The position numbers and the translations under genes were made by a program. Positions 8,941 to 53,710 of a stretch of 64,000 nt of DNA are shown here, one piece after another. The stretch covers positions 62,001 through 126,000 of IMG/VR virus record IMGVR_UViG_3300027754_000034, one strand, 5' to 3'. The number at the start of each line of letters is the position of its first letter. The first letter of the stretch is position 1. The notes under the pieces were generated by a model. That model made no database searches. It saw only the letters and a list, made by a program, of their open reading frames with translations, and was not told the origin of the DNA.

Positions 8941-9594
8941 ATGGATGTGAACCTTCATAAAATAGCGTATAGATTAGCAAAAGTACGAGATATACATGGT
9001 AAGTTCAATATCAGTTATTTTAAATCCCTCAATGACCCTGGAAAGATAAATACATATCTTGAGGAATCTCTGGAAGAAATCGGCAGGTCTACTCGTGCGG
9101 TTTTTACCCTGACCAGTTCGAAAGTAGTCAAAGTAGCGACCAATGATAAAGATCTTCCTATAGGTATTTCGCAGAACGAATCAGAAGTAAATTTTTACAC
9201 TAATCCGCTAACTAAGCTCGTTAGTACGAAAATACTGGAGTACCACCCATCATTTTACTGGATCATATCCGAACTAGTAAAACCTATATCTGATAGTGAA
9301 TTTGAAAAATTTTCTGGTGGTACTCTATCAGATATTGATTATGTGGTTTTTAGAATGGAAGACGAGTCATTGTCGGCCCAGGATATTTTAAAATTAAAAA
9401 AAGAATCCTCCGAAGGATTTCCCCATGACGATTTTATCAAATTGTTAGGGGATCTTAAAGAATCAGGGATGAAACTTAATGACTTAGCTTTATCAAGCAG
9501 TTGGGGTAGGACTTCTTCTGGAAAAGTCGTACTACTTGACTACGGTCTCACCCCAGAATTAATGAAAAATATAGAAAAAAGACGCAAAGGTTAA
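8941..9594 (+). CDS. Protein-kinase-fold (APH/ePK-like) protein with N-terminal IA leader
   Basis: GRSTRAVF, KVVKVA, QNESE, NDL..SSWG, VVLLDYG (DFG-equivalent). Confidence 0.65.
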   Translation: MDVNLHKIAYRLAKVRDIHGKFNISYFKSLNDPGKINTYLEESLEEIGRSTRAVFTLTSSKVVKVATNDKDLPIGISQNESEVNFYTNPLTKLVSTKILEYHPSFYWIISELVKPISDSEFEKFSGGTLSDIDYVVFRMEDESLSAQDILKLKKESSEGFPHDDFIKLLGDLKESGMKLNDLALSSSWGRTSSGKVVLLDYGLTPELMKNIEKRRKG

Positions 9595-10097
9595 ACGTCT
9601 TTTTGGCCAAACACATAGCGTTTGGCCTTGGAAACCCTGTCTGCGGCTTCCGATAACGACTGATTAACCCACTGAGGTAATTCATCGTTCATATTAAGCA
9701 TTTCCATCAATTCTATTAAATCATGACACATATTCTTTACATTACTAAATGCCATATATGACACTGGACCACCATCTCTCGGATGTTCTCGCAAAATTAC
9801 ACTAGGATCCATCATGGCAGTGTTTTCTACAGTATCATAACTAGCCACATTAAGCTGATTCTGTATGGGATTTAGAAACTCACACCCACAATTTACGCAA
9901 CAATGAGGATTATGATTATGATGGTCACACTCTGCACATTCGTGGGTAGGATTCGGTAAATTTAAAAGATGTTTATCGAAATCTTCTCCTTCTATCACGA
10001 ACCGAAGACCACACTGAGTACAAGTAAGACAGTTATTATAGCAAGAATTATCACATTTTTTGCAGACTAAAAAACAGGATGGATCAAATATTATCAT
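9591..10097 (-). CDS. Hypothetical phage protein (Cys-rich N-terminus, LPQWV helical C-terminal domain)
   Basis: Several CxxC motifs. The C-terminal YMA...LPQWVNQSLSEAAD pattern recalls small domains seen in large phages. Confidence 0.6.
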   Translation of the reverse strand: MIIFDPSCFLVCKKCDNSCYNNCLTCTQCGLRFVIEGEDFDKHLLNLPNPTHECAECDHHNHNPHCCVNCGCEFLNPIQNQLNVASYDTVENTAMMDPSVILREHPRDGGPVSYMAFSNVKNMCHDLIELMEMLNMNDELPQWVNQSLSEAADRVSKAKRYVFGQKDV

Positions 10098-10148
10098 AGT
10101 CGCATTATCGATTAAAACGTTATAGATCCTTATTTCAGGATTTTTACT

Positions 10149-10550
10149 ATGGATAGTTACTTTATTGAGCGAATTGCTAGTGGTATATCTAGATCAGCCG
10201 GAATTCCTAAGAAGTATGATCATATAGATTTCAAGCCACCGAAATCTGTACAAAAAGCAGCCGAATCAGGTTTAAATATGAGAGGTGAATTCGGGAGAGG
10301 CGGTACTGAAGTTGGCGTTGCTAGAGCTAGAGATTTATCAAACGATACTCAGATAAGCCCTAAGACTGCTCGAAGAATGAAGGCGTATTTTGATCGCCAT
10401 GAAATTGATAAAAAAGGAAAAGGCTGGAGCCCCAGCGGGGAAGGATACCCAAGTGCAGGTCGAATAGCCTGGTTATTGTGGGGTGGTGATCCAGGAAGGT
10501 CTTGGGCAAATAAACTGGTAAAACAAATGAACGCAGCTGACGATAAATAG
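10149..10550 (+). CDS. Conserved phage head-associated protein (GGTxVG...AWxLWGG domain) with IA leader
   Basis: GGTEVGVARARDL, RMKAYFDRHE, GRIAWLLWGGDPGRSWA. Confidence 0.7.
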   Translation: MDSYFIERIASGISRSAGIPKKYDHIDFKPPKSVQKAAESGLNMRGEFGRGGTEVGVARARDLSNDTQISPKTARRMKAYFDRHEIDKKGKGWSPSGEGYPSAGRIAWLLWGGDPGRSWANKLVKQMNAADDK

Positions 10551-10585
10551 TAATAATAGGCCATTTATCTTAAGCTGTAAGTAGT

Positions 10586-11878
10586 ATGGACCCTGTTTTA
10601 TTAAGTAATGCTCTGAAAATTATTGCGAATAAAATAGACTATGATCAGTATCCTTCTAGATTCAAGATAGCGAATCAGCTAGAATTTTTAGTAGCAGGGT
10701 TGTTTCCCGAGTCATCCACTCCCAAATACAATGCGGAGGGCGACCTTATTAAGGTCATTCCGCCTAAATTACCTAATGCTCCGAAGGTCGAACATGGACT
10801 TAAGGAGATTACAGAAACTCGCGAAAAGAGAGAACGAGAGAGAGAGCGACAAAAATACGCTCCGGAAGTGACCGAAAAGAATCATCCTAAATCCTATGAC
10901 CAAAACACGGTTGATAAGCTAATTAAAGAAAACGTTTTATATTATGAAGTGAAGACTAAGTGTCCTTATTGTGGTTGGAGCACTGATGAAGAGACCATGG
11001 AATGTCCAATATGCGAAGAACAAGTGAAAAATGGTCGTGATCCGCATTTCAATGCTACATATAATCCGGCTCGACATGTCGTAAAAGTTTCAAAGATTTT
11101 AAAGATATATGATGTAGATTCCTTTGTAGATTACTTAAAATACAACGATAAGGATACATACTCTCAAAAAGAATTAGAAATCATCTCAGGAACCACTAAT
11201 ATCCCAGATAGTAAACTTAAAACTCAACTATTAGACTTAGGTTACAGTCTAAAGTCTCTATCTTCTAAAGATACTGACTTCGAATATTCTAGTCTAGAAA
11301 GGTTTATCACGCACATAAAGGATAATGATAAAGACTACTGTACTGAGCAGCAGTTAAATAAACTATTGAACTCCTTAAGCACAAATGGTTTACCAGGATT
11401 AAACAAGACCACCAAAGACATCGTAGCCGATCCCAATAAAGCTGAGCAAAAACTATTTTTAGAGACATATTTAGTAGAGAATGGAATTACCATCGGGGAA
11501 TTAAAGCCCACCTTTAAGCCCATGGATGATAAATCCGAAAAAATTTCTCCAAAACAAAAAGCTCTGGGAAAGAAATATTTAGAGTTATCAAAAATTTTAA
11601 AAGATAAGCATGGAGAAGATGTTCCGGCAGAAAAAGTGAAGTTATTTGTACAAGTTAATTTCTTAACGAACGTAGTGGGGGTCGGACCCGTTGTAGAAGC
11701 TTGGTTAAATGCGCAATATGAAGAAGTGGCTCGAGACTTCAGCATATCAAAGAGAGAAATATTGAAGATGATAGCTCAGGAAATGATTCCTGATGAGTAT
11801 GAGTATGGTGGTCTATATGAAGCCGTAGAAGAGGCTCTAACTAGACCCGAGTCATCAAGATTCATTAGACTATCTTAG
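10586..11878 (+). CDS. Hypothetical protein with extended N-terminal leader and Zn ribbon
   Basis: 430-aa ORF. CPYC...CPIC. The N-terminal 39 aa align with those of 53153..53710. Confidence 0.7.
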   Translation: MDPVLLSNALKIIANKIDYDQYPSRFKIANQLEFLVAGLFPESSTPKYNAEGDLIKVIPPKLPNAPKVEHGLKEITETREKRERERERQKYAPEVTEKNHPKSYDQNTVDKLIKENVLYYEVKTKCPYCGWSTDEETMECPICEEQVKNGRDPHFNATYNPARHVVKVSKILKIYDVDSFVDYLKYNDKDTYSQKELEIISGTTNIPDSKLKTQLLDLGYSLKSLSSKDTDFEYSSLERFITHIKDNDKDYCTEQQLNKLLNSLSTNGLPGLNKTTKDIVADPNKAEQKLFLETYLVENGITIGELKPTFKPMDDKSEKISPKQKALGKKYLELSKILKDKHGEDVPAEKVKLFVQVNFLTNVVGVGPVVEAWLNAQYEEVARDFSISKREILKMIAQEMIPDEYEYGGLYEAVEEALTRPESSRFIRLS

Positions 11879-11916
11879 AGTGAGGTATAATATACCTTTC
11901 TTCTATATAGAGCATC

Positions 11917-12612
11917 ATGATAGTGAAAGGAATACCGTTACTTTCTGCGGATTCGGCCAGAAAGAGTAGTCTGACTAGTGTAATATATCATATGGATCGA
12001 GAATTCCTGTCTAAAACGGAGCAACAGGAATGGACTAATCGTAGAATATCCGAAGTAAATAAATTTTACTCGGCTTACAACGCTTTAGTAGAAAAAGGCA
12101 TAGAATTACTGGACGAAAGTACCAGTCTACAAATACTATGTCCATTTCATGATGATAAGAATAAACCTTCAGCTAGATATTATGCAGCTTCCGGAAATAA
12201 AGCAAGTCATTTTTATTGCTTTAAATGCAAAGACCGGTTAGATGGAATAGCCTTACACTCAAGATTTAATTCTAATAAATATTATGAGTCTTTATCTGCA
12301 CTAGAAAAGCGATTCGGAATTAAGGTACCTAAGAAACCTGATAATGTTCACATTCCACTGGTTGAACGGACAGCTGGTTATAAGTCTAGTGCTTGGAATG
12401 ATGTTCCTAGATTCCTCGAAATACTTGAAAATAAACTAATTAGAAACCGTCACAAAGCTACACTTCCTGAGTATATTAAAGTTAATAGAATGATGGACGC
12501 CATTAGATGGGATCATAATGTGACAGGAAGTTCGACTCCTGAAATGATATCTTCTTTAGAAAAAGCCTCAAGATTCATTGATAGTTTTTTCGTTGTCGAA
12601 GAATTACTTTGA
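11917..12612 (+). CDS. CHC2 zinc-finger protein (primase Zn-binding domain, no TOPRIM)
   Basis: CPFHDDKNKPSA...FYCFKC. Confidence 0.8.
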   Translation: MIVKGIPLLSADSARKSSLTSVIYHMDREFLSKTEQQEWTNRRISEVNKFYSAYNALVEKGIELLDESTSLQILCPFHDDKNKPSARYYAASGNKASHFYCFKCKDRLDGIALHSRFNSNKYYESLSALEKRFGIKVPKKPDNVHIPLVERTAGYKSSAWNDVPRFLEILENKLIRNRHKATLPEYIKVNRMMDAIRWDHNVTGSSTPEMISSLEKASRFIDSFFVVEELL

Positions 12613-12891
12613 TTTTCTTTTCTTTGACTTCATCCTTTTGAACATTTCTACTTGTTGAAGCCTTTCTTCAGCTTGGGTCTTCGATGGATAACATCCTCCA
12701 GACCATTCCGGATTGTTTTCGCTATATACACACCACTGCTCTTTATTCTTGGTTTTTCTAACGTAACTCACTTTAGATTCACCACGAGGCAGTGAAGATT
12801 CTGAATGCCCATAATCTGATCTGTCGCTTAGTGGAGAGCTTATCATGGCAATACGACTGGCAATACGAACTAGCATATTTTTAACATTCAT
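12604..12891 (-). CDS. Small phage protein (WCVxS...GCY...AEERLQQVE domain) with IA leader
   Basis: ATG at 12891 gives MNVKNMLVRIASRIA. The C-terminal domain resembles small head-associated phage domains. Confidence 0.7.
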   Translation of the reverse strand: MNVKNMLVRIASRIAMISSPLSDRSDYGHSESSLPRGESKVSYVRKTKNKEQWCVYSENNPEWSGGCYPSKTQAEERLQQVEMFKRMKSKKRKSK

Positions 12892-13524: not shown

Positions 13525-13970
13525 TGTATATCGAATTTGTAGATTATCATATAAAGTTATCCAACGGCGAAACAATCAACATTGCCGAGCTAGATCTAAA
13601 CAGGGTAGATGACTTATATATAAGAGAGTATTTTAGTGTAAAGCGAAAAATCGTTCAGTGGATACCTTTCATTCCCAGAAAAATAATAGAAGAAGCCAAA
13701 ACCGGTTACGATTCGAACTTCAAAAAATATTTAGGAAGTCCTCCCCAGGCCGTATTAAACCGAATAGATAATACCAAGTGTAATGAGAGATATTTTTGTG
13801 CTTCGTACAGACCAGATCTTTGTACTTTGAAACCATCAATACAAAAAAGGGAAGGTGATTATCCCAGGTGTTGGCTATATGAGTCAATCATGAAGTCTGA
13901 ACGACTTATTTTATCTAGCTTAATATTTAAAATGAAAGAAGGGTTCCATATTATTATTGTTTCGGATTAA
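13524..13970 (+). CDS. Hypothetical protein
   Basis: 148-aa ORF translationally coupled to the ligase (TAATG). Confidence 0.6.
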   Translation: MYIEFVDYHIKLSNGETINIAELDLNRVDDLYIREYFSVKRKIVQWIPFIPRKIIEEAKTGYDSNFKKYLGSPPQAVLNRIDNTKCNERYFCASYRPDLCTLKPSIQKREGDYPRCWLYESIMKSERLILSSLIFKMKEGFHIIIVSD

Positions 13971-14976
13971 TTTCGTCCATGAGTTCGTTAAATAACATCT
14001 TGGCCCGAGTTGTTAGCACTTTTGGAATGATCGGGTTTAATGTGATCAGAAGATTACCAACACCGTGGTGGCTTTTAAATCCAGCATTATCTACACAATA
14101 TATATCACCCGAATCTGTACAAGGATTAATGATTAAGATATGATTACTTCCCCACGGAGTACAAATTTCCATTTTACCGCCATGCACCATAATGTTCAGT
14201 GGAATTTTCATGGCAGTATGGATATCATTTTCGTGTCGAAGATAATTAGAAATCGACTGTACTAATATTATGATGTATAATTCTCCAGGTGGATTTCCCG
14301 GCTGTCCTTTTCCTGATACTCTTAGTGTATCCCCATTCTTCACTCCGGATGGTATCGATACTATTATTGGCTTTTCCTTAAGTAATTTACCAACTCCGGA
14401 ACAGGCTACACACGATAGGAGAGGCCTGCTACCTCTTCCTGAACATGAAGGGCACTTTCTTGTAGATACGTGAAATATCTCTTGTATACACCCTGACCCT
14501 CCACAACTACCACAATTGATGAACTTGGTGCCTGCCCTGGCTCCCATTCCGTTGCATTCAATACAGTCTTCTATAGACATGCTTGGGAATGATCTCTTTG
14601 TTCCCAAGTATGATTCTGTAAAACTAATCCTAGATTCTATATAGACATCTTCCCCAGGGGAATCGAAGTACGCATGTTTTCGTTTAAACGCATTACCATG
14701 CATATGGTTAAATGGCTTAAATATTTCATCAAAAATCGCTTTCTGGAAATCCCCAGGAGGAAATAACTTTCTATCATATTCTAATTTCTTTTGAGGATTT
14801 GATAGCGTAGCATATGCCTCATTTATTTTCTTGAAAAATGCCTCTGCATGGTCATTCCCCGGATTTTTGTCGGGATGATGTTCTGATACTAATTTTTTAT
14901 ATGCCTTCTTAACGTCCTCATCCTTCGATTCTTTTGGAATCCCCAATACTTCGTAGTATGATTGATTCATAACCAA
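13954..14976 (-). CDS. dnaJ: DnaJ (class A Hsp40)
   Basis: YYEVLGI...HHPDKNPG J domain, four CxxCxGxG repeats, C-terminal IPSGVKNGDTLRVSGKG. Confidence 0.95.
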   Translation of the reverse strand: MVMNQSYYEVLGIPKESKDEDVKKAYKKLVSEHHPDKNPGNDHAEAFFKKINEAYATLSNPQKKLEYDRKLFPPGDFQKAIFDEIFKPFNHMHGNAFKRKHAYFDSPGEDVYIESRISFTESYLGTKRSFPSMSIEDCIECNGMGARAGTKFINCGSCGGSGCIQEIFHVSTRKCPSCSGRGSRPLLSCVACSGVGKLLKEKPIIVSIPSGVKNGDTLRVSGKGQPGNPPGELYIIILVQSISNYLRHENDIHTAMKIPLNIMVHGGKMEICTPWGSNHILIINPCTDSGDIYCVDNAGFKSHHGVGNLLITLNPIIPKVLTTRAKMLFNELMDEINPKQ

Positions 14977-21573: not shown

Positions 21574-22206
21574 GTGGTATCTCTGGAAATTAATAAAGAA
21601 TCAACTCAAAAGAAACCAGATCGTCTTCCTTGGCCAAGGAATGCGTTTGATGATGAGAAGGTGGCACTTGGTATTGACATTAGAAAGAAGAAACTAGATA
21701 TAGAAAAAATAGTATACAAATTTTTTAAAGTGGATGGTTATTCAATGGAGGATTTACTTCAAGAAGTCTATACTGCGATCATACATAAAAACACCACAAG
21801 AAGTGTTCACGATCCGAGGAAGTCATCTTTTGGTCATTATGTGTACATGGTAGCCAATAATGTGTGCATTAATATAGTATCCAAGAAAAAACGATATGAT
21901 AAAGAAAAAGATAGTATTTTTGAACCTAATCAAGAAACCGGTAAAACCTTAGAAGAGTCATATGAAAGCATATCAGATGGGCATGTGGAGAGTGAAAGCA
22001 TTTTGGCTCTAGAACTACGTCTGAGAAGAATGAAAAGACATGACTTAGCGAGGTATGTTAGAGCATCTCGTGTTGGGTCTTCCCCCGATATCATAAGAGC
22101 AGCATTATCTTATGGAGATAAAAAGGTATCTCATAAGATAATGAGAGATATGAGACATCAAGTAGTAACTATTGCTACGAATTTGTCGAATTCTTGGTCT
22201 TTATAG
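21574..22206 (+). CDS. Phage sigma-70-family (ECF-like) sigma factor
   Basis: Region 2 pattern EDLLQEVY...HDPRKSSFGHYVYMVANN; HTH-like C-terminus. Confidence 0.7.
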   Translation: MVSLEINKESTQKKPDRLPWPRNAFDDEKVALGIDIRKKKLDIEKIVYKFFKVDGYSMEDLLQEVYTAIIHKNTTRSVHDPRKSSFGHYVYMVANNVCINIVSKKKRYDKEKDSIFEPNQETGKTLEESYESISDGHVESESILALELRLRRMKRHDLARYVRASRVGSSPDIIRAALSYGDKKVSHKIMRDMRHQVVTIATNLSNSWSL

Positions 22207-30764: not shown

Positions 30765-31274
30765 GTGGAATACATATCATATAGCGACATAGCCCTAAAA
30801 ATTTCTTCGACAAAGATAGCCCTTGTTCCAGAAAAAGAGGGTGCTTATGGAGCACCTGATGGTCAGATCATTTCTCTACTCAAGGACTTATTATGCTGCA
30901 AATACTCTATAGACGCTGCCTATCGTAGCTTTGCGGACAGAGTAAGGGGTCCTTGGAGAGATGCCCTTGTAGAACACTGGAAGGACCATGCTAAAGAAGA
31001 ACGCTCCGCAGCTTACGATATAGCCATGAAAATTGTAGGGATGGGTGGAGATCCATTTCTACACATGTTATCGATCCCCGAATGTCCCGCCAATGTTGAA
31101 GCACTATGTGCTTGCTTGGCTCAAATGGAATTAAATTTGATTGAAACTAGCCGAGCACTAATAGGATGTTCCGGGGACAATACGGCCATAAGAGTCATGG
31201 CTGAGAATATTATTCTAATAGATACTCAACACTTAGATGACCTAAAAAGAATGTGCGTTCAATTAGCTGTGTGA
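30765..31274 (+). CDS. Ferritin-like (bacterioferritin/Dps-fold) protein with IA leader
   Basis: Four-helix pattern Y..F...VRG...EHWKDHAKEER...KIVGMGGDP...E...QHLDDL. Confidence 0.75.
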   Translation: MEYISYSDIALKISSTKIALVPEKEGAYGAPDGQIISLLKDLLCCKYSIDAAYRSFADRVRGPWRDALVEHWKDHAKEERSAAYDIAMKIVGMGGDPFLHMLSIPECPANVEALCACLAQMELNLIETSRALIGCSGDNTAIRVMAENIILIDTQHLDDLKRMCVQLAV

Positions 31275-37144: not shown

Positions 37145-38194
37145 TTACGCGGCCATTGCTTTACGTGCTCGTCTCTTTGTTTGAGCCTCCATCCTGCAAA
37201 TTCCGCATTTATACCTAATTCCACCAGTTTTATTAGGGATTTTTTCACATTTTTCGAAGGGCACTAACCCATGATGTTTACATATTTTATGAGTCTTTGT
37301 GGTAGTCTTGGAAGAAATAGACTCAGATATCTTTAATCTGGATTCATATGACCATTTACGATCTCCCCGTTTAGCGAGTACCTCAGGTCGTGAATGAATC
37401 TCCTTGGATATCCTACTAGCTTTAATTTTTGATTCCGGCATAGACCAATATTCCGATATAGACTCGGCCAGTCTCTTTTTAACTTCATCTTTATTCACGG
37501 CTAATTTAATCTTTTCTCGCACCTCAGGAGTCGCAGAGCGAGACGACCTTGATATTTTATCTTTATGTTCCTGGCTTAATACTTTTCCTTTTTGAGCTTG
37601 GGAACACTTCGCTCGTGCCTCTGGCCTGCTGGCTCCATCACGAATTTTTTCTATGAACTTGGACCTGTATTCAGGGTCTGAATTTAATCTCTCGGCAAAT
37701 AATCTATACTTTGCTAATGCTTCGGGAGAAACGGTTCTTTCACGATTCCGAATTGAAATGGGAATCATTTTCTCCCGATAATCGGGACGATCCCAAGGAT
37801 TCTTTATAGGATGATGGGTATGAGACCCGCCTCGTTTCATGTTAAAACCCCTTATGGGGTTAGTCGTATCGTATAATTCGATCCAGTATTCTTCAGCTAT
37901 ATTGGCAGATTCCAGGTCATGGCAAACCTGAAGTATTTCATGATCGAATGCTTCGGGTCCGTAAAGCCTAATAGTATTATACCAATGATTATCTAGAATT
38001 TTCTTTCTAGCGTTATTTTTTGCTTTAGAAAGGTGTTCAGACCACCTTCTCTCCCATCTTTTGCTGGTTAATCCGATATATCTCCTACCGGATTCTCTAT
38101 GAAAATGACAGTATATGGTGTATATAGATGAGGCCTCCGTTTTACGGGAGGCCTCATCTAGTTTGTGGTTTTGTTCCATAAGGGACTTTACCAC
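37145..38194 (-). CDS. Free-standing GIY-YIG homing endonuclease with NUMOD3-like repeats
   Basis: YTIYCH...RYIGLT, RW..H, E.YWI, GFNMKRGG; repeats such as LSQEHKDKIS and SYESRLKIS. Confidence 0.88.
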   Translation of the reverse strand: MVKSLMEQNHKLDEASRKTEASSIYTIYCHFHRESGRRYIGLTSKRWERRWSEHLSKAKNNARKKILDNHWYNTIRLYGPEAFDHEILQVCHDLESANIAEEYWIELYDTTNPIRGFNMKRGGSHTHHPIKNPWDRPDYREKMIPISIRNRERTVSPEALAKYRLFAERLNSDPEYRSKFIEKIRDGASRPEARAKCSQAQKGKVLSQEHKDKISRSSRSATPEVREKIKLAVNKDEVKKRLAESISEYWSMPESKIKASRISKEIHSRPEVLAKRGDRKWSYESRLKISESISSKTTTKTHKICKHHGLVPFEKCEKIPNKTGGIRYKCGICRMEAQTKRRARKAMAA

Positions 38195-38210
38195 ACATGT
38201 TGCTAATACA

Positions 38211-39086
38211 TCATTGGAGAAAATCGTCGTAGCTTGATACTAGTTTTGGAGACTCTGCTTCACCTGAACCGACCTGAGAATTACCTCCACCGAGGAGCTT
38301 CTCACGAAGCTTATCGATTTTCATATCGAACCCGAGATTATTGGATACATGCTTCCAATTGCGGAGACCCTGATCTAAAACCCAACTACGGATTTCAGAG
38401 TCCATTTTGCCCTTAGCCCAAACAGCAGAGCTACCAGCAGTGATTACCTGCTTTTGATACTTAGGATCTCCATCGAGAGCCACAATAAGATCGATTGTAG
38501 ATTTTTCTTCTGCACGTGCTTCCTTATAGACATCCTCGATCTGCCTAAACTTCTTCGCTGTCATCCGCCAGACAGCGAAATTTACATATTTCTTTGCGTT
38601 AAGGAGTTCCTCATCTACCTGAACCCCATCCTTAACAGGATAAGTCATGACGATCATCCCTACGGTCTGATCAGCATCACCCATTTTGTTGCAGCAAAGC
38701 TCGGGCTTGACTACAGTCTTACCTTCATATTGGCTCAGGCAGCGAATTGATCCGAGACCATCACGATAGTGGGTCCATGCAAATGCGAACTTAGGAGATT
38801 TGATATCTAACCGATCAACCTCAGTAAGTTGTTCTACTGGCTTACTAAGCTGATCAGCAATCTTTTTATCGATCTTTGCGATAAGATCTGCCTTCTCTGC
38901 GTCGGTAAGAGGAGCACCTTTCTCTCTTGCCTTCGCCACGAGAACCCCGTCATGAACTCTTTTAAAGGAAACTATGGAGAGCCTGTCTTTTTGGCCGCTT
39001 CTTGTTTGCTTAAAGCGGTCAATGCCTTGACTCTTGATTACTGTTCCCTCTTCAAACCCGAATTCGATTACTGAATTATCTGACAT
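38211..39086 (-). CDS. Probable single-stranded DNA-binding protein (gp32-like)
   Basis: Lies in the recombination cluster, H..C...CC metal site, acidic tail SYDDFLQ, codon bias suggesting high expression. Confidence 0.55.
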   Translation of the reverse strand: MSDNSVIEFGFEEGTVIKSQGIDRFKQTRSGQKDRLSIVSFKRVHDGVLVAKAREKGAPLTDAEKADLIAKIDKKIADQLSKPVEQLTEVDRLDIKSPKFAFAWTHYRDGLGSIRCLSQYEGKTVVKPELCCNKMGDADQTVGMIVMTYPVKDGVQVDEELLNAKKYVNFAVWRMTAKKFRQIEDVYKEARAEEKSTIDLIVALDGDPKYQKQVITAGSSAVWAKGKMDSEIRSWVLDQGLRNWKHVSNNLGFDMKIDKLREKLLGGGNSQVGSGEAESPKLVSSYDDFLQ

Positions 39087-39172
39087 GTTATTCTCGCTTT
39101 GACTTTGAACCGTTGTACGCTTAAAGTTAACAATTAACTTAAACGTTTTTTTACATTACATTCCGAATCGGC

Positions 39173-39799
39173 CTACTTCAGCCACACCTGTTGCGGATCG
39201 CCGTCGTCCGTGCACCAATTTTGCCATTTATGGGTTCCCTGAAGCGATTCGATAAGGTTATGGGACACAACGGAGAGATCCTTAAGGGTAAAGAATTCCT
39301 CTCGGAAGCTGCTATCCGGCATCGCCTTGCAGGCTTCATGTACAGCCATGCTATATACGAAGCCGGTCATTGGCGGGATCATGACACCAATCATAGAAAG
39401 GACGCCTTGGAGCCTTGAAAGGATTCCTTTACCTCCCATCGAGTGCTCGGTGACGAGCACGGCGGCTGGTTTTCCTGCCATACAGTAATGGTCGTTCACG
39501 AGAGTCATCCGTTCCAGCATCTGTTGGAGCTTACTGGACCACGAATCCCAGTAGGTGCCGGTCGTGAAAACGTACCCGATGGCACCGTGCATCGTATCTC
39601 GTAGATCTCCCCATGGAGCTTGCGGGTCTACTAGCACGATCTCATATCCAGCTTCTACCAAGGCGTCGATTACTGTCTTGACCAGGATTTTCGTGTTCCC
39701 ACCAAGCCCGCCCTCAATAACAGCCACATACCGTGTATTGCATATGGGTATATCGAGGTTACTTCGAAGCGACCCCAAGTCTAGGTCAGACACGTTCAT
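39173..39799 (-). CDS. Flavodoxin-like / NADPH-dependent FMN reductase
   Basis: GLGGNT, YVFTTGTYWDSWSS, GKPAAVLVT, GGKG; noticeably higher GC than its neighbours. Confidence 0.78.
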   Translation of the reverse strand: MNVSDLDLGSLRSNLDIPICNTRYVAVIEGGLGGNTKILVKTVIDALVEAGYEIVLVDPQAPWGDLRDTMHGAIGYVFTTGTYWDSWSSKLQQMLERMTLVNDHYCMAGKPAAVLVTEHSMGGKGILSRLQGVLSMIGVMIPPMTGFVYSMAVHEACKAMPDSSFREEFFTLKDLSVVSHNLIESLQGTHKWQNWCTDDGDPQQVWLK

Positions 39800-40042
39800 G
39801 ACTTTTCCTCCATCAAAGCTTCCATCTCGTCCACCTCTTTATTACACCGTGGACAGAAAACGCACGCGGGAAACCAGTCATATACTCGCACTTTCTTCTT
39901 ACATATAAAGCATAGGTGGGTGCAAATGAAGATGCGCTTTACCTTCATGAGAGGGCATGGGCGTTCACTTCGAGCCAATCAAACGTCTCGTGTTGTGGAG
40001 AAGTCTAATATTCTATGTAGTCTAATATTTTTCATAGTGTTC

Positions 40043-42483: not shown

Positions 42484-42678
42484 TCACATGGCATGAACAG
42501 CGTTTAAAATACCTAATTTACAATTATTCCTATAAGGGGATTGTATATTTGGTATGATGTTTGACGTTTTGGTTTTGTCTTCAGGATGACCCAGTACTCC
42601 GCATTTTTGACATTTATACGTCAAATTACTGCCTCTTAGTAATTCCCACTCATGTTCAGTTTCCATCAGTATCCCCAA
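42484..42678 (-). CDS. Hypothetical protein
   Basis: 64-aa ORF, HxW...CxxCG. Confidence 0.5.
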   Translation of the reverse strand: MGILMETEHEWELLRGSNLTYKCQKCGVLGHPEDKTKTSNIIPNIQSPYRNNCKLGILNAVHAM

Positions 42679-43642
42679 AATATTCTTTGACCATGAGGTT
42701 ACCGTAGTGTCTAGCTCTGGACTTTATTTTCCTAAAACAGTCTGTTTCTATCTGCCGAATTCGTTCTCGGCTTAAATCTAATATCCCTCCTATTTCCTCA
42801 AGAGTACATGGCTCTTTACCATTAAGTCCATAACGATGGGTAAGAACTAGTTGCTCCTTCTGACTAAGAAATTTAAGTATCTCACTTATTACAGCAGATT
42901 TTTCTGTGGATTCATAAGAGTTATCAGGTTCCGAATCATGACTGACCAGTAAATCTCCTACAGTGATTTCTGAGTTAAAACTAATTTTATCATCAAATGA
43001 TTTTATTCTGATTCTTGACGCTTCTAAAATTCTGTTATTTAGATTTTTAGATTTTATGATTTCTTCGATATTCTCACCTCCATTTTCGGAAAAGGATTTA
43101 TGACTTTCTTTCTTGATCTGACTTAATTTATCACATATGTTCGTTGGTATTCGAATAGTGCTTATGTTATTTTCTTGATATCTACCAATTGCTTGTCTTA
43201 TCCACCATGAAGCATAAGTACTAAACTTATATCCCAATTCTTGGTTAAATCTCAGTACCGCTTGAATCAGTCCGATAGACCCCTCTTGGTAGTATTCTTC
43301 ATAATCTATGCTAGTGGTACCCCTTTTACACCATTTTCTTGTCCAATAAGCTACCAGTGGGAGATTTTGTCTCACGCATTCTCGTAAAACGTTGTCCTTA
43401 TCTATTTTTAGACTGCGGTACTTTTCAGTCCATGAATCATTAGATTTACTAGCTACGGAGTCTGCTTCCTTTACAAGAGAGTCTATCCATTCTCTTGCGT
43501 GGGCGGAATACCTTTTTTCCTTAATATCAGACAGACTTGGCAATTCTTGGCGATATGTCTTAAAGCAGTCTAAATCTAAGATATGGTGAATGAATTGCGA
43601 CTCTAAGTCTGCGAATATTGAGAAATTATTTAAAATCATCAT
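42656..43642 (-). CDS. RpoD/RpoS-like group 1-2 sigma-70 factor
   Basis: NLPLV, QEGSIGLIQAVLRF, GYKFSTYASWWIRQAI, TLEEIG...SRERIRQIE. Confidence 0.93.
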   Translation of the reverse strand: MMILNNFSIFADLESQFIHHILDLDCFKTYRQELPSLSDIKEKRYSAHAREWIDSLVKEADSVASKSNDSWTEKYRSLKIDKDNVLRECVRQNLPLVAYWTRKWCKRGTTSIDYEEYYQEGSIGLIQAVLRFNQELGYKFSTYASWWIRQAIGRYQENNISTIRIPTNICDKLSQIKKESHKSFSENGGENIEEIIKSKNLNNRILEASRIRIKSFDDKISFNSEITVGDLLVSHDSEPDNSYESTEKSAVISEILKFLSQKEQLVLTHRYGLNGKEPCTLEEIGGILDLSRERIRQIETDCFRKIKSRARHYGNLMVKEYFGDTDGN

Positions 43643-45015: not shown

Positions 45016-45030
45016 AATAACTCACTTTTG

Positions 45031-45117
45031 CGGAGACTGAGAGATTCGAACTCTCGGTACCATTAATGGTACACATGATTTCCAATCATGCACCTTCGGC
45101 CACTCGGTCAAGTCTCC
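45031..45117 (-). tRNA. tRNA-Ser(GGA)
   Basis: GGAGACT/AGTCTCC acceptor stem, CATGA-TTGGAAA-TCATG anticodon arm, long variable arm, GAGAG-TTCGAAT-CTCTC T arm, G discriminator, no encoded CCA. Confidence 0.95.
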
Positions 45118-47495: not shown

Positions 47496-48515
47496 ATGGA
47501 ATCCACTACAAAAAAATATCTAGTATTTATTAGTGTTATTTTACTACTCATTGGAGTCATAGTATTCCTACAGAATAAAATAAATAAATTAAAATATACC
47601 ATAGTAGATCAAAAGTCTCAAAAGACTCTGGATGATGGTGTAGTCAAGAGTGGAAACACCAAGGTAGAGCCAGGGGCTATTGTTGATGCCGGTAAGAATG
47701 CAGGAATCCCTATAGATGGAATTAAAACAGATGCTGATGCAAATGGTGAAAAAGTAACAGGAATAAACACCACGAATTCAAATAGTAGTGGAGACAAAAA
47801 AGTAAATTTATCATCATCTAGGACGGAACCTAGAAAAGACATTCATCCCACCATTATCGAAGAACCGCCACACTCCGCGCCTATCGACTGCAGTAAGCTT
47901 GTGAAGTGTCCAGATAATCCTGACAAATACGGATACTTTATTAATAAACAAATACTTAACATTCATGAACCATTTAATAATTTAAATTTACCTTTTGGTG
48001 ATATGGGATTTAGTGCGTGGCAAGAAAAACCGTGGTCCTATACTATTTTTCCTCGAAATTATGAATCTACTATAGTGATAACTGAGAATGAATATGGTAA
48101 AAAATCAGCTTATGCTAGGTTCAGCGTCAAAGTAAATGAAAAATCATACGATATTCCAATTAGCAAGTCACAGCTAATATACTCTGATTTACCATCTACT
48201 TGGAATTTGAATCCTAGAATAATGGCTGGCATGTCTGTTGGAGTTGGGATTCCTCTATCATTTGTGTGGGGTCCTTCTCTTGGAGTCACAATAGGCAGCT
48301 ATGGAAGATATATAAGTTCACCCGATTGGTTTTTTGGAATTATATCCGTAGGATATGAAATTAATCAAAGGAACATATTCTTATCTGTAGATCCTGTTTT
48401 ATATAAAATAAGCAATCACATTCCTTTTACAAATAACCTTTATATCGGCCCCACTTTGGGAATCGATATGAGCGGGAATTTTATCGGATCAGCATCTCTA
48501 AAACTTGCCTTTTGA
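47496..48515 (+). CDS. Membrane-anchored/exported protein with beta-rich C-terminus
   Basis: N-terminal TM segment; the C-terminus has alternating hydrophobic strands ending in F. Confidence 0.6.
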   Translation: MESTTKKYLVFISVILLLIGVIVFLQNKINKLKYTIVDQKSQKTLDDGVVKSGNTKVEPGAIVDAGKNAGIPIDGIKTDADANGEKVTGINTTNSNSSGDKKVNLSSSRTEPRKDIHPTIIEEPPHSAPIDCSKLVKCPDNPDKYGYFINKQILNIHEPFNNLNLPFGDMGFSAWQEKPWSYTIFPRNYESTIVITENEYGKKSAYARFSVKVNEKSYDIPISKSQLIYSDLPSTWNLNPRIMAGMSVGVGIPLSFVWGPSLGVTIGSYGRYISSPDWFFGIISVGYEINQRNIFLSVDPVLYKISNHIPFTNNLYIGPTLGIDMSGNFIGSASLKLAF

Positions 48516-48731
48516 GTGACCCCTAAACACAATCAATCCATGAGATAAGTCGTATGGAGATAAAGCCACTCTTACCGGGTCTCCCACAATTACCCGTATA
48601 CGATTTTGCCTCATTTTACCATTTAATCGGCCTACAACAGGAGGCCCTCCATTTTTTAAATCAATTCTAAATATTCCGCCATTAGAATCCAATACTACAC
48701 CATCAAACTCAATGTGATCTTCTCTAGGCAT
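48498..48731 (-). CDS. infA: Translation initiation factor IF-1
   Basis: EDHIEFDGVV, GKMRQNRIRVIVGDPV.V.LSPYDLSHGLIVFR. Confidence 0.95.
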   Translation of the reverse strand: MPREDHIEFDGVVLDSNGGIFRIDLKNGGPPVVGRLNGKMRQNRIRVIVGDPVRVALSPYDLSHGLIVFRGHSKGKF

Positions 48732-49598: not shown

Positions 49599-51596
49599 AT
49601 GGCCACTGTTCTAACTCCCCCAATTCGCACGATTCTTCCCAAAACGACTCTGACATTCAATCGTGCAAATAAAAATGTCTGGATGGGTCGTTGTTATCAT
49701 ACCTCAAGTTTAATTTCGGGAAACCGAATTCTTGTAACAGGGGGAGTTGACTGCGAATTATCTAAATCTTGTGAAATATATGATATAAATACTAATACAT
49801 GGACAAAAAGCTTTAATTTAATAAGGAATCGGGAAGCTCATTGCGCAGTAGTACTAAATAGCGGAAAGGTTTTAGTAGCTGGTGGCGGATTTAGAATGCA
49901 GGACACCCTTGATTGGTATTCATATACTAACACGGGGGAATACTTCAATGGTCTGGGGTGGTATTCAGCTGCAAATTTCATTTCCGTTACAAAGTCCGGT
50001 CTTTCTGGCGTTTTATTAAATGACGGGCGAGCGTTCTTATCTGGCGGCATATTTGGAACTATTGCTGAGACCAGTTGCGATACTTACGATGAATCTACGA
50101 ATTCATTCTCACCGGCTGCATCATTAAACGTAGCCAGAGCTTTTCATACCTCCCATACACTGAGCAATGGGTTGGTGATTGCTATAGCGGGTTCGGGAGA
50201 CGTAGGAAATTATGTTGATAGTATTGAAATATATGACCCAAATTTGGATACTTGGTCCGTTTTTGGTACTACCCTAACTAATGGTGTAATCTTCCATGCC
50301 AGCGTTTTAATTGACGATGGCATTATCTTGATTTCTGGAGGTTCAAACGGAGCCCCCTTAAATGACTGTTACATATATGATTATTTCTTAGCTACTTTAA
50401 CCCCTGTCTCTTCTATGAATCAACCAAGAGCTGGACACACTTCAACTCTCATTACTAATGGGATTAATGCAGGAAAAGTATTAGTTACAGGCGGGTTTGA
50501 TTCAACTGATATTTTAAAAAGCGCGGAATTATACGATCCTCTTACAAATACATGGACACTAGTTGGAACCATGTATGAAGAAGCATGGGGTCACAGTTCT
50601 TTCGATTTAGGTAATGGAGATATTTTAAACTTCGCAGGACAAGTATCCTGGAATAATTACCTACCTCAGTTAACCACAAATAGCACCCAGAAATGTGACA
50701 CTGACGTAACCATTCCGAACATTTATCCTAGCTTCTCCTTAATCACTAGAATGACATCCAGGGATTATGCGTGTGCTTATAATAACGCAGCGGCAGAAGT
50801 CTCTGCCGTAATGGGCGGTGAAACCATTTATTTAACGGTCGGAAATACGCCCCTTACTATCACTTTGGGTGCCATGGATACTTCAGTAGCAGCCATATGT
50901 AGCACTATAAATAGCGCATCTCTTACAGCGGGAATTGATAATTTATATGCAATTCCCGTATTTAATACTACTCCAAATGTCTTTAAACTAATATCTGTAG
51001 ATAAAATATTTACTGGTAGTGGCATAATGTCGTATGCTGACTGGCAAAAGATCGGATTACCTCAGGGTTACTTAAGCGACCCTGCAGTTTCTTCAGTAGA
51101 AGAAATATCAGTTCCTTATATTAGTAATTATGTAGATAACTCTGACTCTGTAAGCAACATACAACCAATTTCCGATCATGCTAATAGAGTCACTCTCTAC
51201 ATTAAATTCAGGACAGAAGACAATTCATCTTCACACCCTAATCATGGATGGGTGGTTATAGCAGTGTTGTGGGATAATGGTGGTTCTGAAGAATATTTAT
51301 TCCTAAATGGACTAATCGAACCATTTACTGTTAACAATTTCAACGCTGGAAATCCCTTGGTCGGTATAGACTCTCAAACAGTTGGTCTTACTTCCATCCC
51401 GCCAAACATAAGCGGCTCAGCATATAATGGCGTTACTCAATCTATGATAAACCTTGAACCTCCTCCTGGAAGCACAGGTATTAGAATAGCTGTATTTACT
51501 GGTGACCCATCTATGATATTGAATAGTACCGGAGATTTTCAGTATCCCTACATAGCGCCAAAGTTGTCTTTGATGATATCTGATGGTACAAGATAA
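49599..51596 (+). CDS. Kelch-repeat beta-propeller virion protein
   Basis: About seven R..H....L..G.VLV.GG...E.YD....W repeats; GAGG RBS. Confidence 0.88.
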   Translation: MATVLTPPIRTILPKTTLTFNRANKNVWMGRCYHTSSLISGNRILVTGGVDCELSKSCEIYDINTNTWTKSFNLIRNREAHCAVVLNSGKVLVAGGGFRMQDTLDWYSYTNTGEYFNGLGWYSAANFISVTKSGLSGVLLNDGRAFLSGGIFGTIAETSCDTYDESTNSFSPAASLNVARAFHTSHTLSNGLVIAIAGSGDVGNYVDSIEIYDPNLDTWSVFGTTLTNGVIFHASVLIDDGIILISGGSNGAPLNDCYIYDYFLATLTPVSSMNQPRAGHTSTLITNGINAGKVLVTGGFDSTDILKSAELYDPLTNTWTLVGTMYEEAWGHSSFDLGNGDILNFAGQVSWNNYLPQLTTNSTQKCDTDVTIPNIYPSFSLITRMTSRDYACAYNNAAAEVSAVMGGETIYLTVGNTPLTITLGAMDTSVAAICSTINSASLTAGIDNLYAIPVFNTTPNVFKLISVDKIFTGSGIMSYADWQKIGLPQGYLSDPAVSSVEEISVPYISNYVDNSDSVSNIQPISDHANRVTLYIKFRTEDNSSSHPNHGWVVIAVLWDNGGSEEYLFLNGLIEPFTVNNFNAGNPLVGIDSQTVGLTSIPPNISGSAYNGVTQSMINLEPPPGSTGIRIAVFTGDPSMILNSTGDFQYPYIAPKLSLMISDGTR

Positions 51597-51718: not shown

Positions 51719-51802
51719 CATTTTTGGCATAAAACTATCATTACTTGGGGCCAATTTCAACATTTTTGGTATAAAACTATCATTACTTGGGGCAAATTTC
51801 AA
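51719..51802. repeat. 42-bp tandem direct repeat x2
   Basis: CATTTTTGG(C/T)ATAAAACTATCATTACTTGGGGC(C/A)AATTTCAA twice, 2 mismatches. Confidence 0.9.
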
Positions 51803-51820
51803 CACGGGTTTTTATCTTTT

Positions 51821-53114
51821 ATGAAAAATATTTCGAAAAGAGCTGATGAATTGAAACATGAAAATCATATGATGGACGTGGAAAGAATATCAATGCGGAT
51901 TGCTTTTGGGAATTCGAACTTGATCGATTCTCGATTGCTTCGTATTGCGTTTCGCGTCATAGAAGCATCTAAGGTTGATGATTTAATACTCGCTAATCCA
52001 GGTTTAGAAGAGAGTATTAAAAAACTCTCCGATAATGATCCTTCTAAAAGTAATAAATATATCGAATGGAGCGTTAAACAACTCAAACAACTGAAACAAC
52101 TGAAACTAGAAGCCACAATGGGGGATTTAATTTCCACCATACAGGCGTTTCATAAAGTTCAAAATAGACTTGAGAAGAAAGACATTAACCAATACAAGAC
52201 CTTGAAAGAACTGGAAGATGCTATAAAGGATCTTCCAGAATCCAAAACCAAAGAAAAGATCCAGGTGAAATCGGGGGCCAAAAAACTTTGGGAGAATGAC
52301 ACGCACGTACTCTTCAGGATGCATACTCAAAATGCTTGCATCGCATATGGAAAAGGCACTAAATGGTGCATAACCATGAAGGATGACAATCCTTGGGATG
52401 AATATACTAATAATAATTCTATTTTTTATTTTTTGATCGACAAAAGACCATCCGAGTCTGAATATTCAAAGATCGCTTGGAACGTCCGAAGGAATATGGA
52501 TGATAATAGCGTTGAAGAAGTCGAGATCCATGACGCTCTTGATGATTTGATAACAAATTCTACGATTCAAGGAATACCGGAGTTCAGTAATATTAATCGC
52601 ATGATCATAGAGGACGCTCCAAAGGCTCCGGATGGGCCCAATGTCTCTAAGCGAAAGGAACTTTTAAAAAAAAATTCTCGCGGATCACGACGCAGGGGAG
52701 AAAGCCGCCCTGCACGGGGCGGACCTGCGCGGGGCGAACCTAACCAAGGCGGACCTGCGCGGGGCGGACATGGCCGGGGCAAACCTGAAAGGGGGAAACC
52801 TGAGCGGGGCGTACCTGACCAATGCGGATTTGAACGAGGCGGACCTGGGCGGGGCGAACATGACCATCGCGAAACTTAACGGGGCGAATTTGACCAGGGC
52901 GTACCTGTACAATGCGAACCTTAGCGGGGCGGACCTGACCGAGGCGGACCTGACCGAGGCGGACCTGACCGAGGCGGACCTGACCGAGGCGGACCTGACC
53001 GGGGCGGACCTGACCGGGGCGAATTTGACCAATGCGAGATTGATCGGAGCGATACTGGACGGGGCAAAAACTCAGGGAGCCAATTTCACCGGAGCCGATA
53101 TGGAACCTGAATGA
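51821..53114 (+). CDS. IA-leader + WCIT (PcfJ-like) domain + pentapeptide-repeat protein, split by a +1 frameshift at an A9 run (52666-52674)
   Basis: Deleting one A gives ...ELLKKILADHDAGEKAALHGADLRGANL..., in frame with ORF 52770..53114. YGKGTKWCIT motif. A(D/N)Lxx repeats. Confidence 0.8.
52929..53018 (+). repeat. 15-bp tandem repeat x6 (ADLTE/ADLTG)
   Basis: GCGGACCTGACCGAG x4 plus GCGGACCTGACCGGG x2. Confidence 0.92.
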
Positions 53115-53152
53115 CCCGTATATATTTTATCTTTTAATGTACCATTCATAAT

Positions 53153-53710
53153 ATGAACCCTGTAAACGCATCCCGTATGATGAAGAGAATGGCTGCCGCG
53201 TTAGCGGCATCCAAGTCCCCTAACAAATCCGCCGTAGCAAAAGATCTTATGGCATTATCTGATGCCATAAACGGTAATAAGAAAGCTGAAGTTTATTTGT
53301 TAAATAAATTGGCTTTCGATCAGGATCAGGATGAGCGCACGGAGCTGTCTGACGACGTTTTTATTGAATTCCAAAAGCATTATCTTGACTGGGCAGGACA
53401 ATTCGTATACTCACAGACTTTGAAAATGGACGGTGATCATGATCACTTCATTCCTAACTACATCACCAATGGCGGTGGCAATGAATCAATGCCTCCATTC
53501 AAAGGCATAATGGTACCGTTCAATATATCAATTGATAAAGACGGAAAAGTCGTAATTTCTTACGAGGACAAATATGTTCCACAAGGGATTAGTTATTCAT
53601 TCTTTCCTGCGAAAGCTAGAGGCAATTGGTCAAAACCAATTGGAGACTCATTTGAATATTTCACTGATAATTGCCCAGAAATGGCGAACTTCATACAAGA
53701 TAACATGTGA
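53153..53710 (+). CDS. Hypothetical protein with extended N-terminal leader
   Basis: 185-aa ORF; the N-terminus aligns with 10586..11878. Confidence 0.7.
   Translation: MNPVNASRMMKRMAAALAASKSPNKSAVAKDLMALSDAINGNKKAEVYLLNKLAFDQDQDERTELSDDVFIEFQKHYLDWAGQFVYSQTLKMDGDHDHFIPNYITNGGGNESMPPFKGIMVPFNISIDKDGKVVISYEDKYVPQGISYSFFPAKARGNWSKPIGDSFEYFTDNCPEMANFIQDNM

What the first reader, a model, noticed from the sequence alone, without database searches (positions are those of the whole stretch)
8941..53270. Shared N-terminal IA leader on at least seven unrelated proteins: candidate capsid-cargo targeting system
Seen: unrelated ORFs scattered across the window start with the same amphipathic basic motif. 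They are the kinase-like 8941 (MDVNLHKIAYRLAK), 10149 (MDSYFIERIASGISRSA), 10586 (LKIIANKID...KIANQL), 12891 (MLVRIASRIAM), ferritin-like 30765 (YSDIALKISS), 51821 (MDVERISMRIAF...LLRIAFRVIEA, two copies) and 53153 (MKRMAAALAA). The core replication enzymes lack it. Known: T4 internal proteins use a short N-terminal capsid-targeting sequence that the prohead protease removes, and phiKZ head proteins carry cleaved propeptides. Inference: this is an equivalent but different tag that loads a set of effectors (kinase, ferritin, pentapeptide DNA mimic) into the head for ejection at infection.
Basis: partly seen in the sequence, partly recalled or inferred. Interest (0 to 1): 0.8.

Follow-up and report, generated by a model that had tools for sequence, protein, structure and literature searches.

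The report
Shared N-terminal tag on phage proteins
Seven unrelated proteins of an uncultured 257-kb phage start with the same small helical tag, and this tag heads hundreds of unrelated proteins in one clade of giant phages; it most likely works as an address label that loads them into the virus head, but packaging itself has not been shown.

Summary
All seven N-termini belong to one tag system with two forms. The short form is a single amphipathic helix with core I-A-x-R-I-A (8941, 10149, 12876 on the minus strand, ferritin 30765, 51869). The long form is a helix-turn-helix of about 40 residues (10586, 53153).

Profiles built only from foreign sequences recover these N-termini as the best hits in an unbiased six-frame translation of the window. 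A profile of the long form finds 805 protein clusters among 1.84 billion proteins. In 122 of the best 149 it starts at residue 1, ahead of at least 92 unrelated cargo families. Pfam, PHROGs, NCBIfam and the PDB have no match.

Conservation is at the protein level. The tag was found only on viral contigs that carry one highly conserved major capsid protein.

Head targeting is the best-supported reading, but only by circumstantial evidence. In other phages, cargo domains are fused to prohead protease or capsid protein, or were detected in virions. Tagged genes also sit in arrays just after the capsid gene. Packaging, cleavage and ejection remain untested, and the "pentapeptide DNA mimic" is not supported.

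The parts
8941..8982 (+). Short tag (residues 1-14, core IAYRLA) of the kinase-like protein, gene 8941-9594
   Evidence: rank 3 of 18,656; short HMM E 0.93, rank 6; kinase-like fold starts at residue 19
10149..10199 (+). Short tag (residues 1-17) of a 133-aa protein, gene 10149-10550. In other phages its domain is fused to head-assembly proteins
   Evidence: the ortholog in L005 keeps the tag; about 28 of the top 120 homologs are tagged, the rest start directly at the domain
10586..10705 (+). Divergent long-form module (helix-turn-helix, residues 1-40) of a 430-aa protein of unknown function, gene 10586-11878
   Evidence: long HMM rank 3, aligned from Met1, E 0.59; aligns over its whole length in A2, with the conserved Pro3, Ala14 and Pro23
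12844..12876 (-). Short tag (residues 1-11, MLVRIASRIAM) of a 90-aa protein, gene 12604-12876 on the minus strand
   Evidence: the gene caller's start; best short-HMM hit, E 0.006; its homolog in L020 is also tagged; its domain is fused to the 10149 domain elsewhere
30765..30836 (+). Degenerate short tag plus linker (residues 1-24) of the ferritin/Dps-like protein, gene 30765-31274
   Evidence: the Pfam Ferritin match starts at residue 37; the L010 ortholog has a strong tag; nearly all 146 homologs are tagged, with the short or the long form
51869..51967 (+). Two-helix tag (residues 1-33, two I-[AS]-x-R-[IV] cores) of a 336-aa protein, gene 51869-52879. The longest ORF starts at 51821, but the true start is 51869
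   Evidence: rank 1; stop upstream in the ortholog; homologs in L019 and L020 are tagged; the PA5oct homolog is a virion protein
53153..53272 (+). Long-form module (residues 1-40) of a 185-aa protein of unknown function, gene 53153-53710
   Evidence: (long HMM rank 1, E 6.7e-4, profile positions 1-31 from Met1)

Best explanation
The tag is a transferable docking element that recruits otherwise unrelated proteins into the assembling head. It comes as a single amphipathic helix, or as a basic helix-turn-helix of about 40 residues whose first helix is that same helix. It is used by one clade of uncultured jumbo phages related to Bacillus phage G.

Proposed course: late in infection the tag binds a common receptor inside the procapsid, either the unusually conserved major capsid protein or a core/scaffold protein. 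The cargo (ferritin/Dps-like, kinase-like, small head-accessory domains and many unknowns) is enclosed before the DNA enters, and may later leave with the DNA.

Shown: the tag exists, sits at residue 1, is modular, is conserved as protein, folds as a confident helical hairpin, heads hundreds of cargo families, and travels with one capsid-protein subclade.

Inferred: the receptor, encapsidation, any cleavage and any ejection.
For: (1) Modularity.
- Homologs of 10149 split into forms that start directly at the domain and forms with a 12-25-residue tag.
- Ferritin orthologs carry either the short or the long form on the same core, so the two forms are interchangeable.

(2) Scale.
- 805 clusters at E<=1e-3 in 1.84e9 proteins.
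- 122 of 149 start at residue 1, and 135 cargo sequences fall into 92 families.

(3) Fusion logic.
- The 10149 domain is fused to a Peptidase_S78 prohead protease.
- It stands at the N-terminus of a fused capsid-protein gene in Roseobacter phage CRP-821, and in a 'capsid maturation protease' of phage DSL-LC01.
- The 12876 domain is fused to the 10149 domain.
- The 8941 fold resembles the kinase of polyvalent proteins, which are predicted to be packaged and injected (PMC5512222).

(4) Virion evidence. The PA5oct homolog of 51869 was detected in virions by ESI-MS/MS. The family often sits next to the large terminase gene or the capsid gene.

(5) Gene context.
- L166 has six consecutive tagged genes right after the capsid gene.
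- In L105 a tagged gene follows the capsid gene by about 110 bases.
- The window phage's own head operon (L189) has a canonical module protein 1.75 kb after the capsid gene (E 9e-18).

(6) Co-occurrence with the capsid protein.
- Module hits lie near the capsid gene in 15 of 25 long loci of the subclade with >=86% capsid-protein identity, against 0 of 7 at 77-80%.
- None were confirmed in 185,579 species genomes.

(7) Structure. AlphaFold gives a helical hairpin at pLDDT 94. The conserved residues are mostly charged and the net charge is about +6. By my recollection this is like the coat-binding helix-loop-helix of the P22 scaffolding protein.

(8) Precedent. The T4 capsid-targeting sequence sits on highly diverse internal proteins (PMC3012670).
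Against: - There is no virion proteome for any phage that has the tag, and no cultured member was found.
- Four tagged window genes lie among DnaB, primase and ligase genes, not among head genes.
- The density of modules near capsid genes (about 1 per 31 kb) is not clearly higher than elsewhere in these genomes.
- No conserved cleavage motif follows the tag. Only 37% have D or E at the first position after helix 2.
- The module also occurs in tandem, internally and at C-termini.
- No receptor was identified. The conserved 163-aa head protein is not related to the module (hhalign probability 1.3%).
Confidence: 0.5

Rival explanations
1. A general docking or oligomerisation module for a hub other than the capsid. 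The helix-turn-helix would pair into four-helix bundles, or bind a phage or host scaffold, and so gather diverse proteins at a replication factory, a membrane site or a host target. This would resemble RIIa docking domains with AKAP helices, or dockerin with cohesin.
For: - Proteins exist that consist of two or three modules only, and a two-module protein is predicted as a four-helix arrangement (pLDDT 80, pTM 0.60).
- The module is also found internally and at C-termini.
- Four tagged window genes lie among replication genes.
- Cargo such as a ferritin or a kinase could act in the cytoplasm.
Against: - It does not explain why three cargo domains are fused to protease, capsid or polyvalent proteins elsewhere.
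- It does not explain the arrays directly after the capsid gene, or the tie to one capsid-protein subclade.
Confidence: 0.25
2. A small basic DNA-binding helix-turn-helix that tethers cargo to phage DNA. The purpose would be co-packaging with the genome, or action on DNA inside the cell.
For: - The canonical module has a net charge of about +6 with conserved Arg and Lys.
- The ferritin-like cargo has a weak Dps match.
- T4 internal proteins lie embedded in the packaged DNA (PMC3012670).
Against: - The short form is a single helix of about 12 residues and is interchangeable with the long form on the same cargo.
- No match to any DNA-binding family was found in Pfam, NCBIfam or the PDB.
- The turn is long and holds a proline, unlike classical DNA-binding helix-turn-helix motifs.
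Confidence: 0.1
3. A stability or chaperone tag. The N-terminal helix would be recognised by the phage-encoded DnaJ or by a host protease, to time folding or degradation of accessory proteins.
For: - The phage encodes a full-length DnaJ (13954-14976).
- N-terminal hydrophobic-basic peptides are typical recognition signals for chaperones and ClpX (my own knowledge).
Against: - A 40-residue hairpin folded at pLDDT 94 with conserved charged surface residues is not a typical degron.
- Tandem-module proteins and C-terminal copies do not fit.
- This reading has no link to the capsid-protein subclade or to the head-fusion evidence.
Confidence: 0.07
4. A chance likeness of amphipathic helices, or a conserved nucleotide element (a recombination or translation signal) whose translation is incidental.
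For: Individual window hits have weak E-values (0.2-6 for 8941, 10149, 10586 and 51869). A simple regular expression shows only 2-3-fold N-terminal enrichment.
Against: - Independent profiles recover the same N-termini.
- 805 clusters are significant against 1.84e9 proteins.
- Third codon positions are near random (31% identity) while positions 1 and 2 are conserved (59%).
- Codons differ between the window copies.
Confidence: 0.02

Closest known systems
T4 capsid-targeting sequence (CTS) of internal proteins IPI-III and Alt
   Same: A short N-terminal element shared by highly diverse, fast-evolving small proteins that are often encoded in arrays. In T4 it is sufficient to load foreign proteins into the prohead core (PMC3012670).
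   Different: - There is no sequence likeness. The T4 CTS is about 10 residues (MKTYQEFIAE, from memory) and is removed by gp21.
- Here the element is a 12-residue I-A-x-R-I-A helix or a 40-residue hairpin.
- No cleavage motif is conserved, and the host phage is related to phage G, not to T4.
- Packaging is not shown.
Coat-binding helix-loop-helix of the P22 scaffolding protein
   Same: A basic helix-turn-helix of about 40 residues that docks on the inner face of an HK97-fold capsid protein and can carry foreign cargo (my own knowledge). The predicted shape and charge of the module are alike.
   Different: The P22 element is C-terminal and belongs to one scaffold protein, not to hundreds of cargo families. 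No sequence or Foldseek match was found.
Encapsulin cargo-loading peptides and microcompartment encapsulation peptides
   Same: Short transferable peptides that address enzymes, including ferritin-like proteins, into a protein shell. The encapsulin shell has the HK97 fold. Microcompartment peptides are N-terminal amphipathic helices with the same i, i+1, i+4, i+5 hydrophobic pattern (my own knowledge).
   Different: Encapsulin peptides are mostly C-terminal, extended and Gly/Ser/Leu-rich. No encapsulin or microcompartment shell gene was seen. The context here is a tailed phage with portal, protease and tail genes.
MuF-anchored and polyvalent effector proteins of phages (Iyer et al. 2017, PMC5512222)
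   Same: Diverse effector domains are delivered through the phage head. The kinase-like cargo of 8941 resembles Kinase-PolyVal, and the 10149 domain is found fused to head proteins.
   Different: In those proteins the domains are joined covalently to MuF, portal or protease in giant polypeptides. Here each domain is a separate small protein with a common tag.

Membership tests
T4-type capsid-targeting sequence | N-terminal consensus of about 10 residues resembling MKTYQEFIAE | tested here: not met
   The tag consensus is I-A-x-R-I-A or the 40-residue module. The T4 consensus is recalled from memory. The phage is related to phage G (capsid protein 37% identical to gp27).
T4-type capsid-targeting sequence | Removed by the prohead protease at a conserved site after the tag | tested here: inconclusive
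   A prohead protease gene exists (phrog_18299). No conserved motif follows the tag: D or E at the first position after helix 2 in 37%. Cleavage itself cannot be tested here.
T4-type capsid-targeting sequence | The tag alone is sufficient to load a foreign protein into the head | not testable with these tools
   This needs expression of tag-reporter fusions together with the head genes.
Encapsulin cargo-loading peptide | C-terminal (or internal) Gly/Ser/Leu-rich peptide next to an encapsulin shell gene | tested here: not met
   The tag is N-terminal and helical. The neighbouring genes are portal, protease, capsid and tail genes of a tailed phage.
Any curated protein family (Pfam-A, PHROGs v4, NCBIfam 20) | Significant HMM match over the tag | tested here: not met
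   No family covers the module in 10 canonical proteins per library. The only trace is DUF7433 at E 0.0035, below its cut-off. The window proteins have none.
P22-type scaffold coat-binding domain or other solved helix-loop-helix domains | Sequence or fold match to a solved structure | tested here: not met
   Profile against PDB sequences: best E 0.33, unrelated proteins. Foldseek with the module and with the two-module model: no hit at E<=0.001, only generic hairpins and bundles.
Kinase-PolyVal (cargo of 8941) | Truncated Ser/Thr-kinase-like fold of polyvalent proteins | tested here: inconclusive
   Atlas feature score 0.94 with 174 shared features. Structural neighbours are kinase-like at TM about 0.5. 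The Pfam scan found no kinase family. phrog_4301 has unknown function.
Ferritin-like superfamily (cargo of 30765) | Pfam Ferritin domain above the gathering score | tested here: met
   PF00210, 33.8 bits against a cut-off of 24.5, residues 37-164. A homolog has a weak DpsA match.

The most novel reading that the evidence does not exclude
A clade of uncultured giant phages runs a general cargo-loading system for the capsid. One small helical tag, unrelated to the T4 sequence and absent from domain databases, addresses hundreds of interchangeable effector families into the head. These include a Dps/ferritin-like protein and a kinase. The major capsid protein is frozen at about 90-95% identity, while every other head protein drifts to 37-63%, because it is the shared receptor of all these tags.
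Probability: 0.35. Interest if true: 0.9.

Novelty: new variant of a known kind. Interest (0 to 1): 0.8.

Why it matters
If the tag is a head-loading signal, three things follow.

- It marks, by sequence alone, the injected-protein arsenal of a large and globally distributed group of giant phages that nobody has cultured. That is at least 805 protein clusters, most of unknown function, and a ready list of candidate anti-defence and host-takeover effectors.
- It would be a second, independent invention of the T4 strategy, and would link phage heads to encapsulin-like cargo loading, down to a ferritin-like cargo.
- It would offer a compact, portable tag for packing foreign proteins into large capsids.

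Even if the receptor is not the capsid, an undescribed 40-residue domain that heads hundreds of unrelated viral proteins deserves a family entry and an experiment.

Tried and rejected
- **Shared promoter-like word upstream of tagged genes (TTAYCTTAAGCT).** 18 matches were found against 18 expected, so the idea was dropped.
- **Nucleotide-level repeat.** Rejected, because codons differ.
- **Near-identical cultured relatives.** None by megablast. DNA polymerase is at most 32% identical to any deposited phage.
- **Walking the contig upstream of the window (7-62 kb).** It gave only tape-measure-like, baseplate and fibre giants, with no head genes and no tags. The head module was finally found at 216-237 kb through a protease alignment.
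- **Context of P0026 and P0265.** Uninformative: one is a different, GC-rich phage and the other has no DNA on file.
- **Search for the module or the tagged ferritin in cultured phages.** No true hits. There is no module near the capsid gene of LR745208.1 or Tunturi_5.
- **Scan of species genomes.** 0 confirmed of 44 pattern matches.
- **tblastn of the 12876 protein against phages.** No match.
- **PDB profile, Foldseek and Atlas searches for the module and for 53153.** Nothing specific.
- **The conserved 163-aa head protein as a relative of the module.** Rejected by hhalign (probability 1.3%).
- **Broad alignment A3.** Too diverse for locus searches. A narrower one (A4) worked.
- **Cleavage motif after the tag.** None is conserved.
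Full report
**What the window is.** It is bases 62,001-126,000 of a 257,205-bp viral contig from a JGI metagenome (Ga0209596_1000003 = IMGVR_UViG_3300027754_000034).
- No deposited phage is close: megablast finds none, and DNA polymerase is at most 32% identical to any deposited phage.
- The window holds about 90 genes for replication, nucleotide metabolism, transcription and many unknowns.

**Checking the observation.** All seven N-termini are present, with three corrections.
- The '12891' gene is on the minus strand and starts at 12876.
- The '51821' protein starts at 51869, because its ortholog in L016 has a stop two codons before that Met.
- Codons differ between copies, so this is not a DNA repeat.

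A post-hoc regular expression gave only 2-3-fold N-terminal enrichment, so I used independent profiles.
- A matrix built only from relatives' tags placed three window tags at ranks 1-3 of 18,656 positions.
- A matrix built only from window tags found 3 N-terminal hits against 1 internal hit in relatives that had been chosen by DnaB or RecA likeness alone.

**The decisive enlargement.**
- Homologs of the ferritin-like protein (146 proteins) nearly all begin with the tag. It is either a short form (consensus about LLRIASRVA, followed by a Pro-containing linker) or a long form of about 40 residues.
- HMMs built from these foreign ferritins alone were searched against all 548 six-frame stop-to-stop segments of the window. 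With the long form the order was 53153 (E 6.7e-4), 12876, 10586. With the short form it was 12876 (E 0.006), ferritin, 51869, then 8941 and 10149.
- The N-termini of 53153 and 10586 align over the whole long form, with its conserved Pro3, Ala14 and Pro23.
- Since orthologous ferritin cores carry either form, the two forms are functionally interchangeable. The short form corresponds to helix 1 of the long one.

**Scale.** A profile of the long form was searched against 1.84 billion representative proteins.
- It found 805 clusters at E<=1e-3 and 27 at E<=1e-10.
- In 122 of the best 149 the module starts at residue 1, and in 137 within the first six residues.
- The 135 downstream sequences fall into 92 unrelated families, 47-1,303 residues long.
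- A minority have two or three tandem modules, or an internal or C-terminal copy.
- Pfam, PHROGs and NCBIfam have no model for it. PDB sequence and fold searches give nothing specific.
- AlphaFold predicts a helical hairpin (helices 3-19 and 25-41) at mean pLDDT 94. A protein made of two modules is predicted as four helices.
- Across 15 module-coding sequences, codon positions 1 and 2 are 59% identical and position 3 is 31% identical. Selection therefore acts on the peptide.

**Modularity.** The 1,401 homologs of 10149 split into two kinds: proteins that start directly at the domain, and proteins with a 12-25-residue tag in front. About 28 of the best 120 are tagged, including the ortholog in L005. 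The stand-alone homolog in Pseudomonas phage PaBG has no tag.

**Evidence that bears on function.**
- *Cargo domains elsewhere.* The domain of 10149 is fused to an HK97-type prohead protease (P0032). It stands at the N-terminus of a 974-residue fused capsid-protein gene in Roseobacter phage CRP-821. It lies in a 'capsid maturation protease' of phage DSL-LC01 and in 'minor head protein' genes of Nodularia phages.
- The small Cys-containing domain of 12876 occurs fused in front of the 10149 domain in other proteins, and its homolog in L020 is tagged too.
- The 51869 family has a member in phage PA5oct that was detected in virions by mass spectrometry and lies next to a gene that resembles large terminases. 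Other members lie beside large terminase genes, or just after the capsid gene (L017 and L018).
- The fold of 8941 begins after the tag. It resembles the kinase of phage polyvalent proteins, which are predicted to be packaged and injected (PMC5512222).

*Head operon context.*
- The tag-bearing phages share a head operon with portal, a 163-aa protein, protease (phrog_18299), a scaffold-like protein, a 216-228-aa protein and a 295-aa major head protein (phrog_2522).
- In L105 a module gene follows the capsid gene directly.
- In L166 six consecutive small genes after the capsid gene all begin with the short tag.
- The window phage's own head operon lies at contig 216-237 kb. It has a canonical module protein 1.75 kb after the capsid gene (E 9e-18).

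*Tie to the capsid protein.*
- Module hits occur near the capsid gene in 15 of 25 long loci whose capsid protein is >=86% identical to the reference, and in 0 of 7 at 77-80% (hypergeometric p about 0.006).
- No module was found in the 41-kb and 25-kb stretches around the capsid genes of LR745208.1 and Tunturi_5, in cultured phages or in species genomes.
- The capsid protein is 94% identical between the window phage and the L105 phage, while the other head proteins are 37-63% identical and DnaB is 78%.

**Interpretation.** The best reading is a head-targeting tag, analogous to the T4 capsid-targeting sequence (PMC3012670) but unrelated to it. In shape and charge it is closer to a scaffold-type coat-binding hairpin. 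I put this at about 0.5, for these reasons.
- There is no virion proteome.
- No receptor was found; the 163-aa head protein is not related to the module.
- No conserved cleavage site follows the tag.
- Four window genes with the tag sit among replication genes.
- Module density near capsid genes is not clearly above that elsewhere.

The main rival is a docking or oligomerisation module for some other hub (0.25). DNA tethering (0.1) and a chaperone or degradation tag (0.07) come next. Chance and a nucleotide-level element are excluded.

'Kinase-like' and 'ferritin-like' hold. The 'pentapeptide DNA mimic' does not: the tail of 51869 is an Arg/Gly/Pro/Glu-rich low-complexity stretch with no Pfam hit. 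The replication enzymes indeed lack the tag.

**Novelty.** The principle (one short tag on many diverse phage proteins) is known from T4. This tag, its two forms, its hairpin fold, its scale and its clade are, as far as the libraries and literature searches show, undescribed.

Noticed in passing
L189:13673-14560 (window phage, contig about 229 kb), compared with L105:9000-9884 and the loci: The 295-aa major capsid protein is 94% identical between phages whose protease, scaffold-like and other head proteins are only 37-63% identical and whose DnaB is 78% identical. 485 IMG/VR loci carry it at >=77% identity, on contigs up to 619 kb. Its cultured relatives are Tunturiibacter phage Tunturi_5 (45%) and Bacillus phage G (37%).
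   Followed up: partly
L016:8545-8754 and L016:~10004 onward: A truncated duplicate of the tag-coding start of the 51869 ortholog (a 69-codon ORF) lies 1.2 kb before the full gene, with two reverse-strand genes in between. This looks like cassette duplication or insertion at the tag.
   Followed up: partly
L100:10872-13619, and several loci that match only protease residues 1-184: The prohead protease gene of some relatives carries an intein with a LAGLIDADG endonuclease (Pfam Intein_splicing, LAGLIDADG_3). The protein is 916 aa instead of 503-517 aa.
   Followed up: partly
window 57871-58581: A cluster of short tandem repeats (21-33-bp units, and 22 bp x 2.9 at 58518-58581) lies in a gene-poor stretch with low-complexity ORFs. 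It may be a regulatory or origin-like region.
   Followed up: no
window 45030-45117 (-): tRNA-Ser (anticodon GGA), the only tRNA in the window.
   Followed up: no
window 13954-14976 (-), 48498-48731 (-), 42656-43642 (-), 21574-22206 (+), 49599-51596 (+): The phage encodes a full-length DnaJ (J domain, zinc finger and C-terminal domain), a translation factor IF-1 homolog, a sigma-70-like factor (42656-43642) plus a weaker sigma-like candidate (21574-22206, faint Pfam hit only), and a Kelch-repeat protein.
   Followed up: no
window 36000-40000, gene 37145-38194 (-): A GIY-YIG homing-endonuclease gene lies in a stretch with higher G+C (0.44 against about 0.37), which suggests a mobile insertion.
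   Followed up: no
Contig 7-62 kb upstream of the window (L083-L089); window 323-3793 is the end of one of them: A run of very large structural proteins: 1,150, 1,274, 1,766 and 2,222 aa, plus three 1,543-1,661-aa fibre-like proteins (at least two share a C-terminal motif). None carries the tag.
   Followed up: partly
window 52600-52879 (C-terminus of the 51869 protein): Degenerate Arg/Gly/Pro/Glu-rich repeats (units such as GGPARGE and GKPERG). They are longer in the L016 ortholog and match no Pfam repeat family.
   Followed up: no
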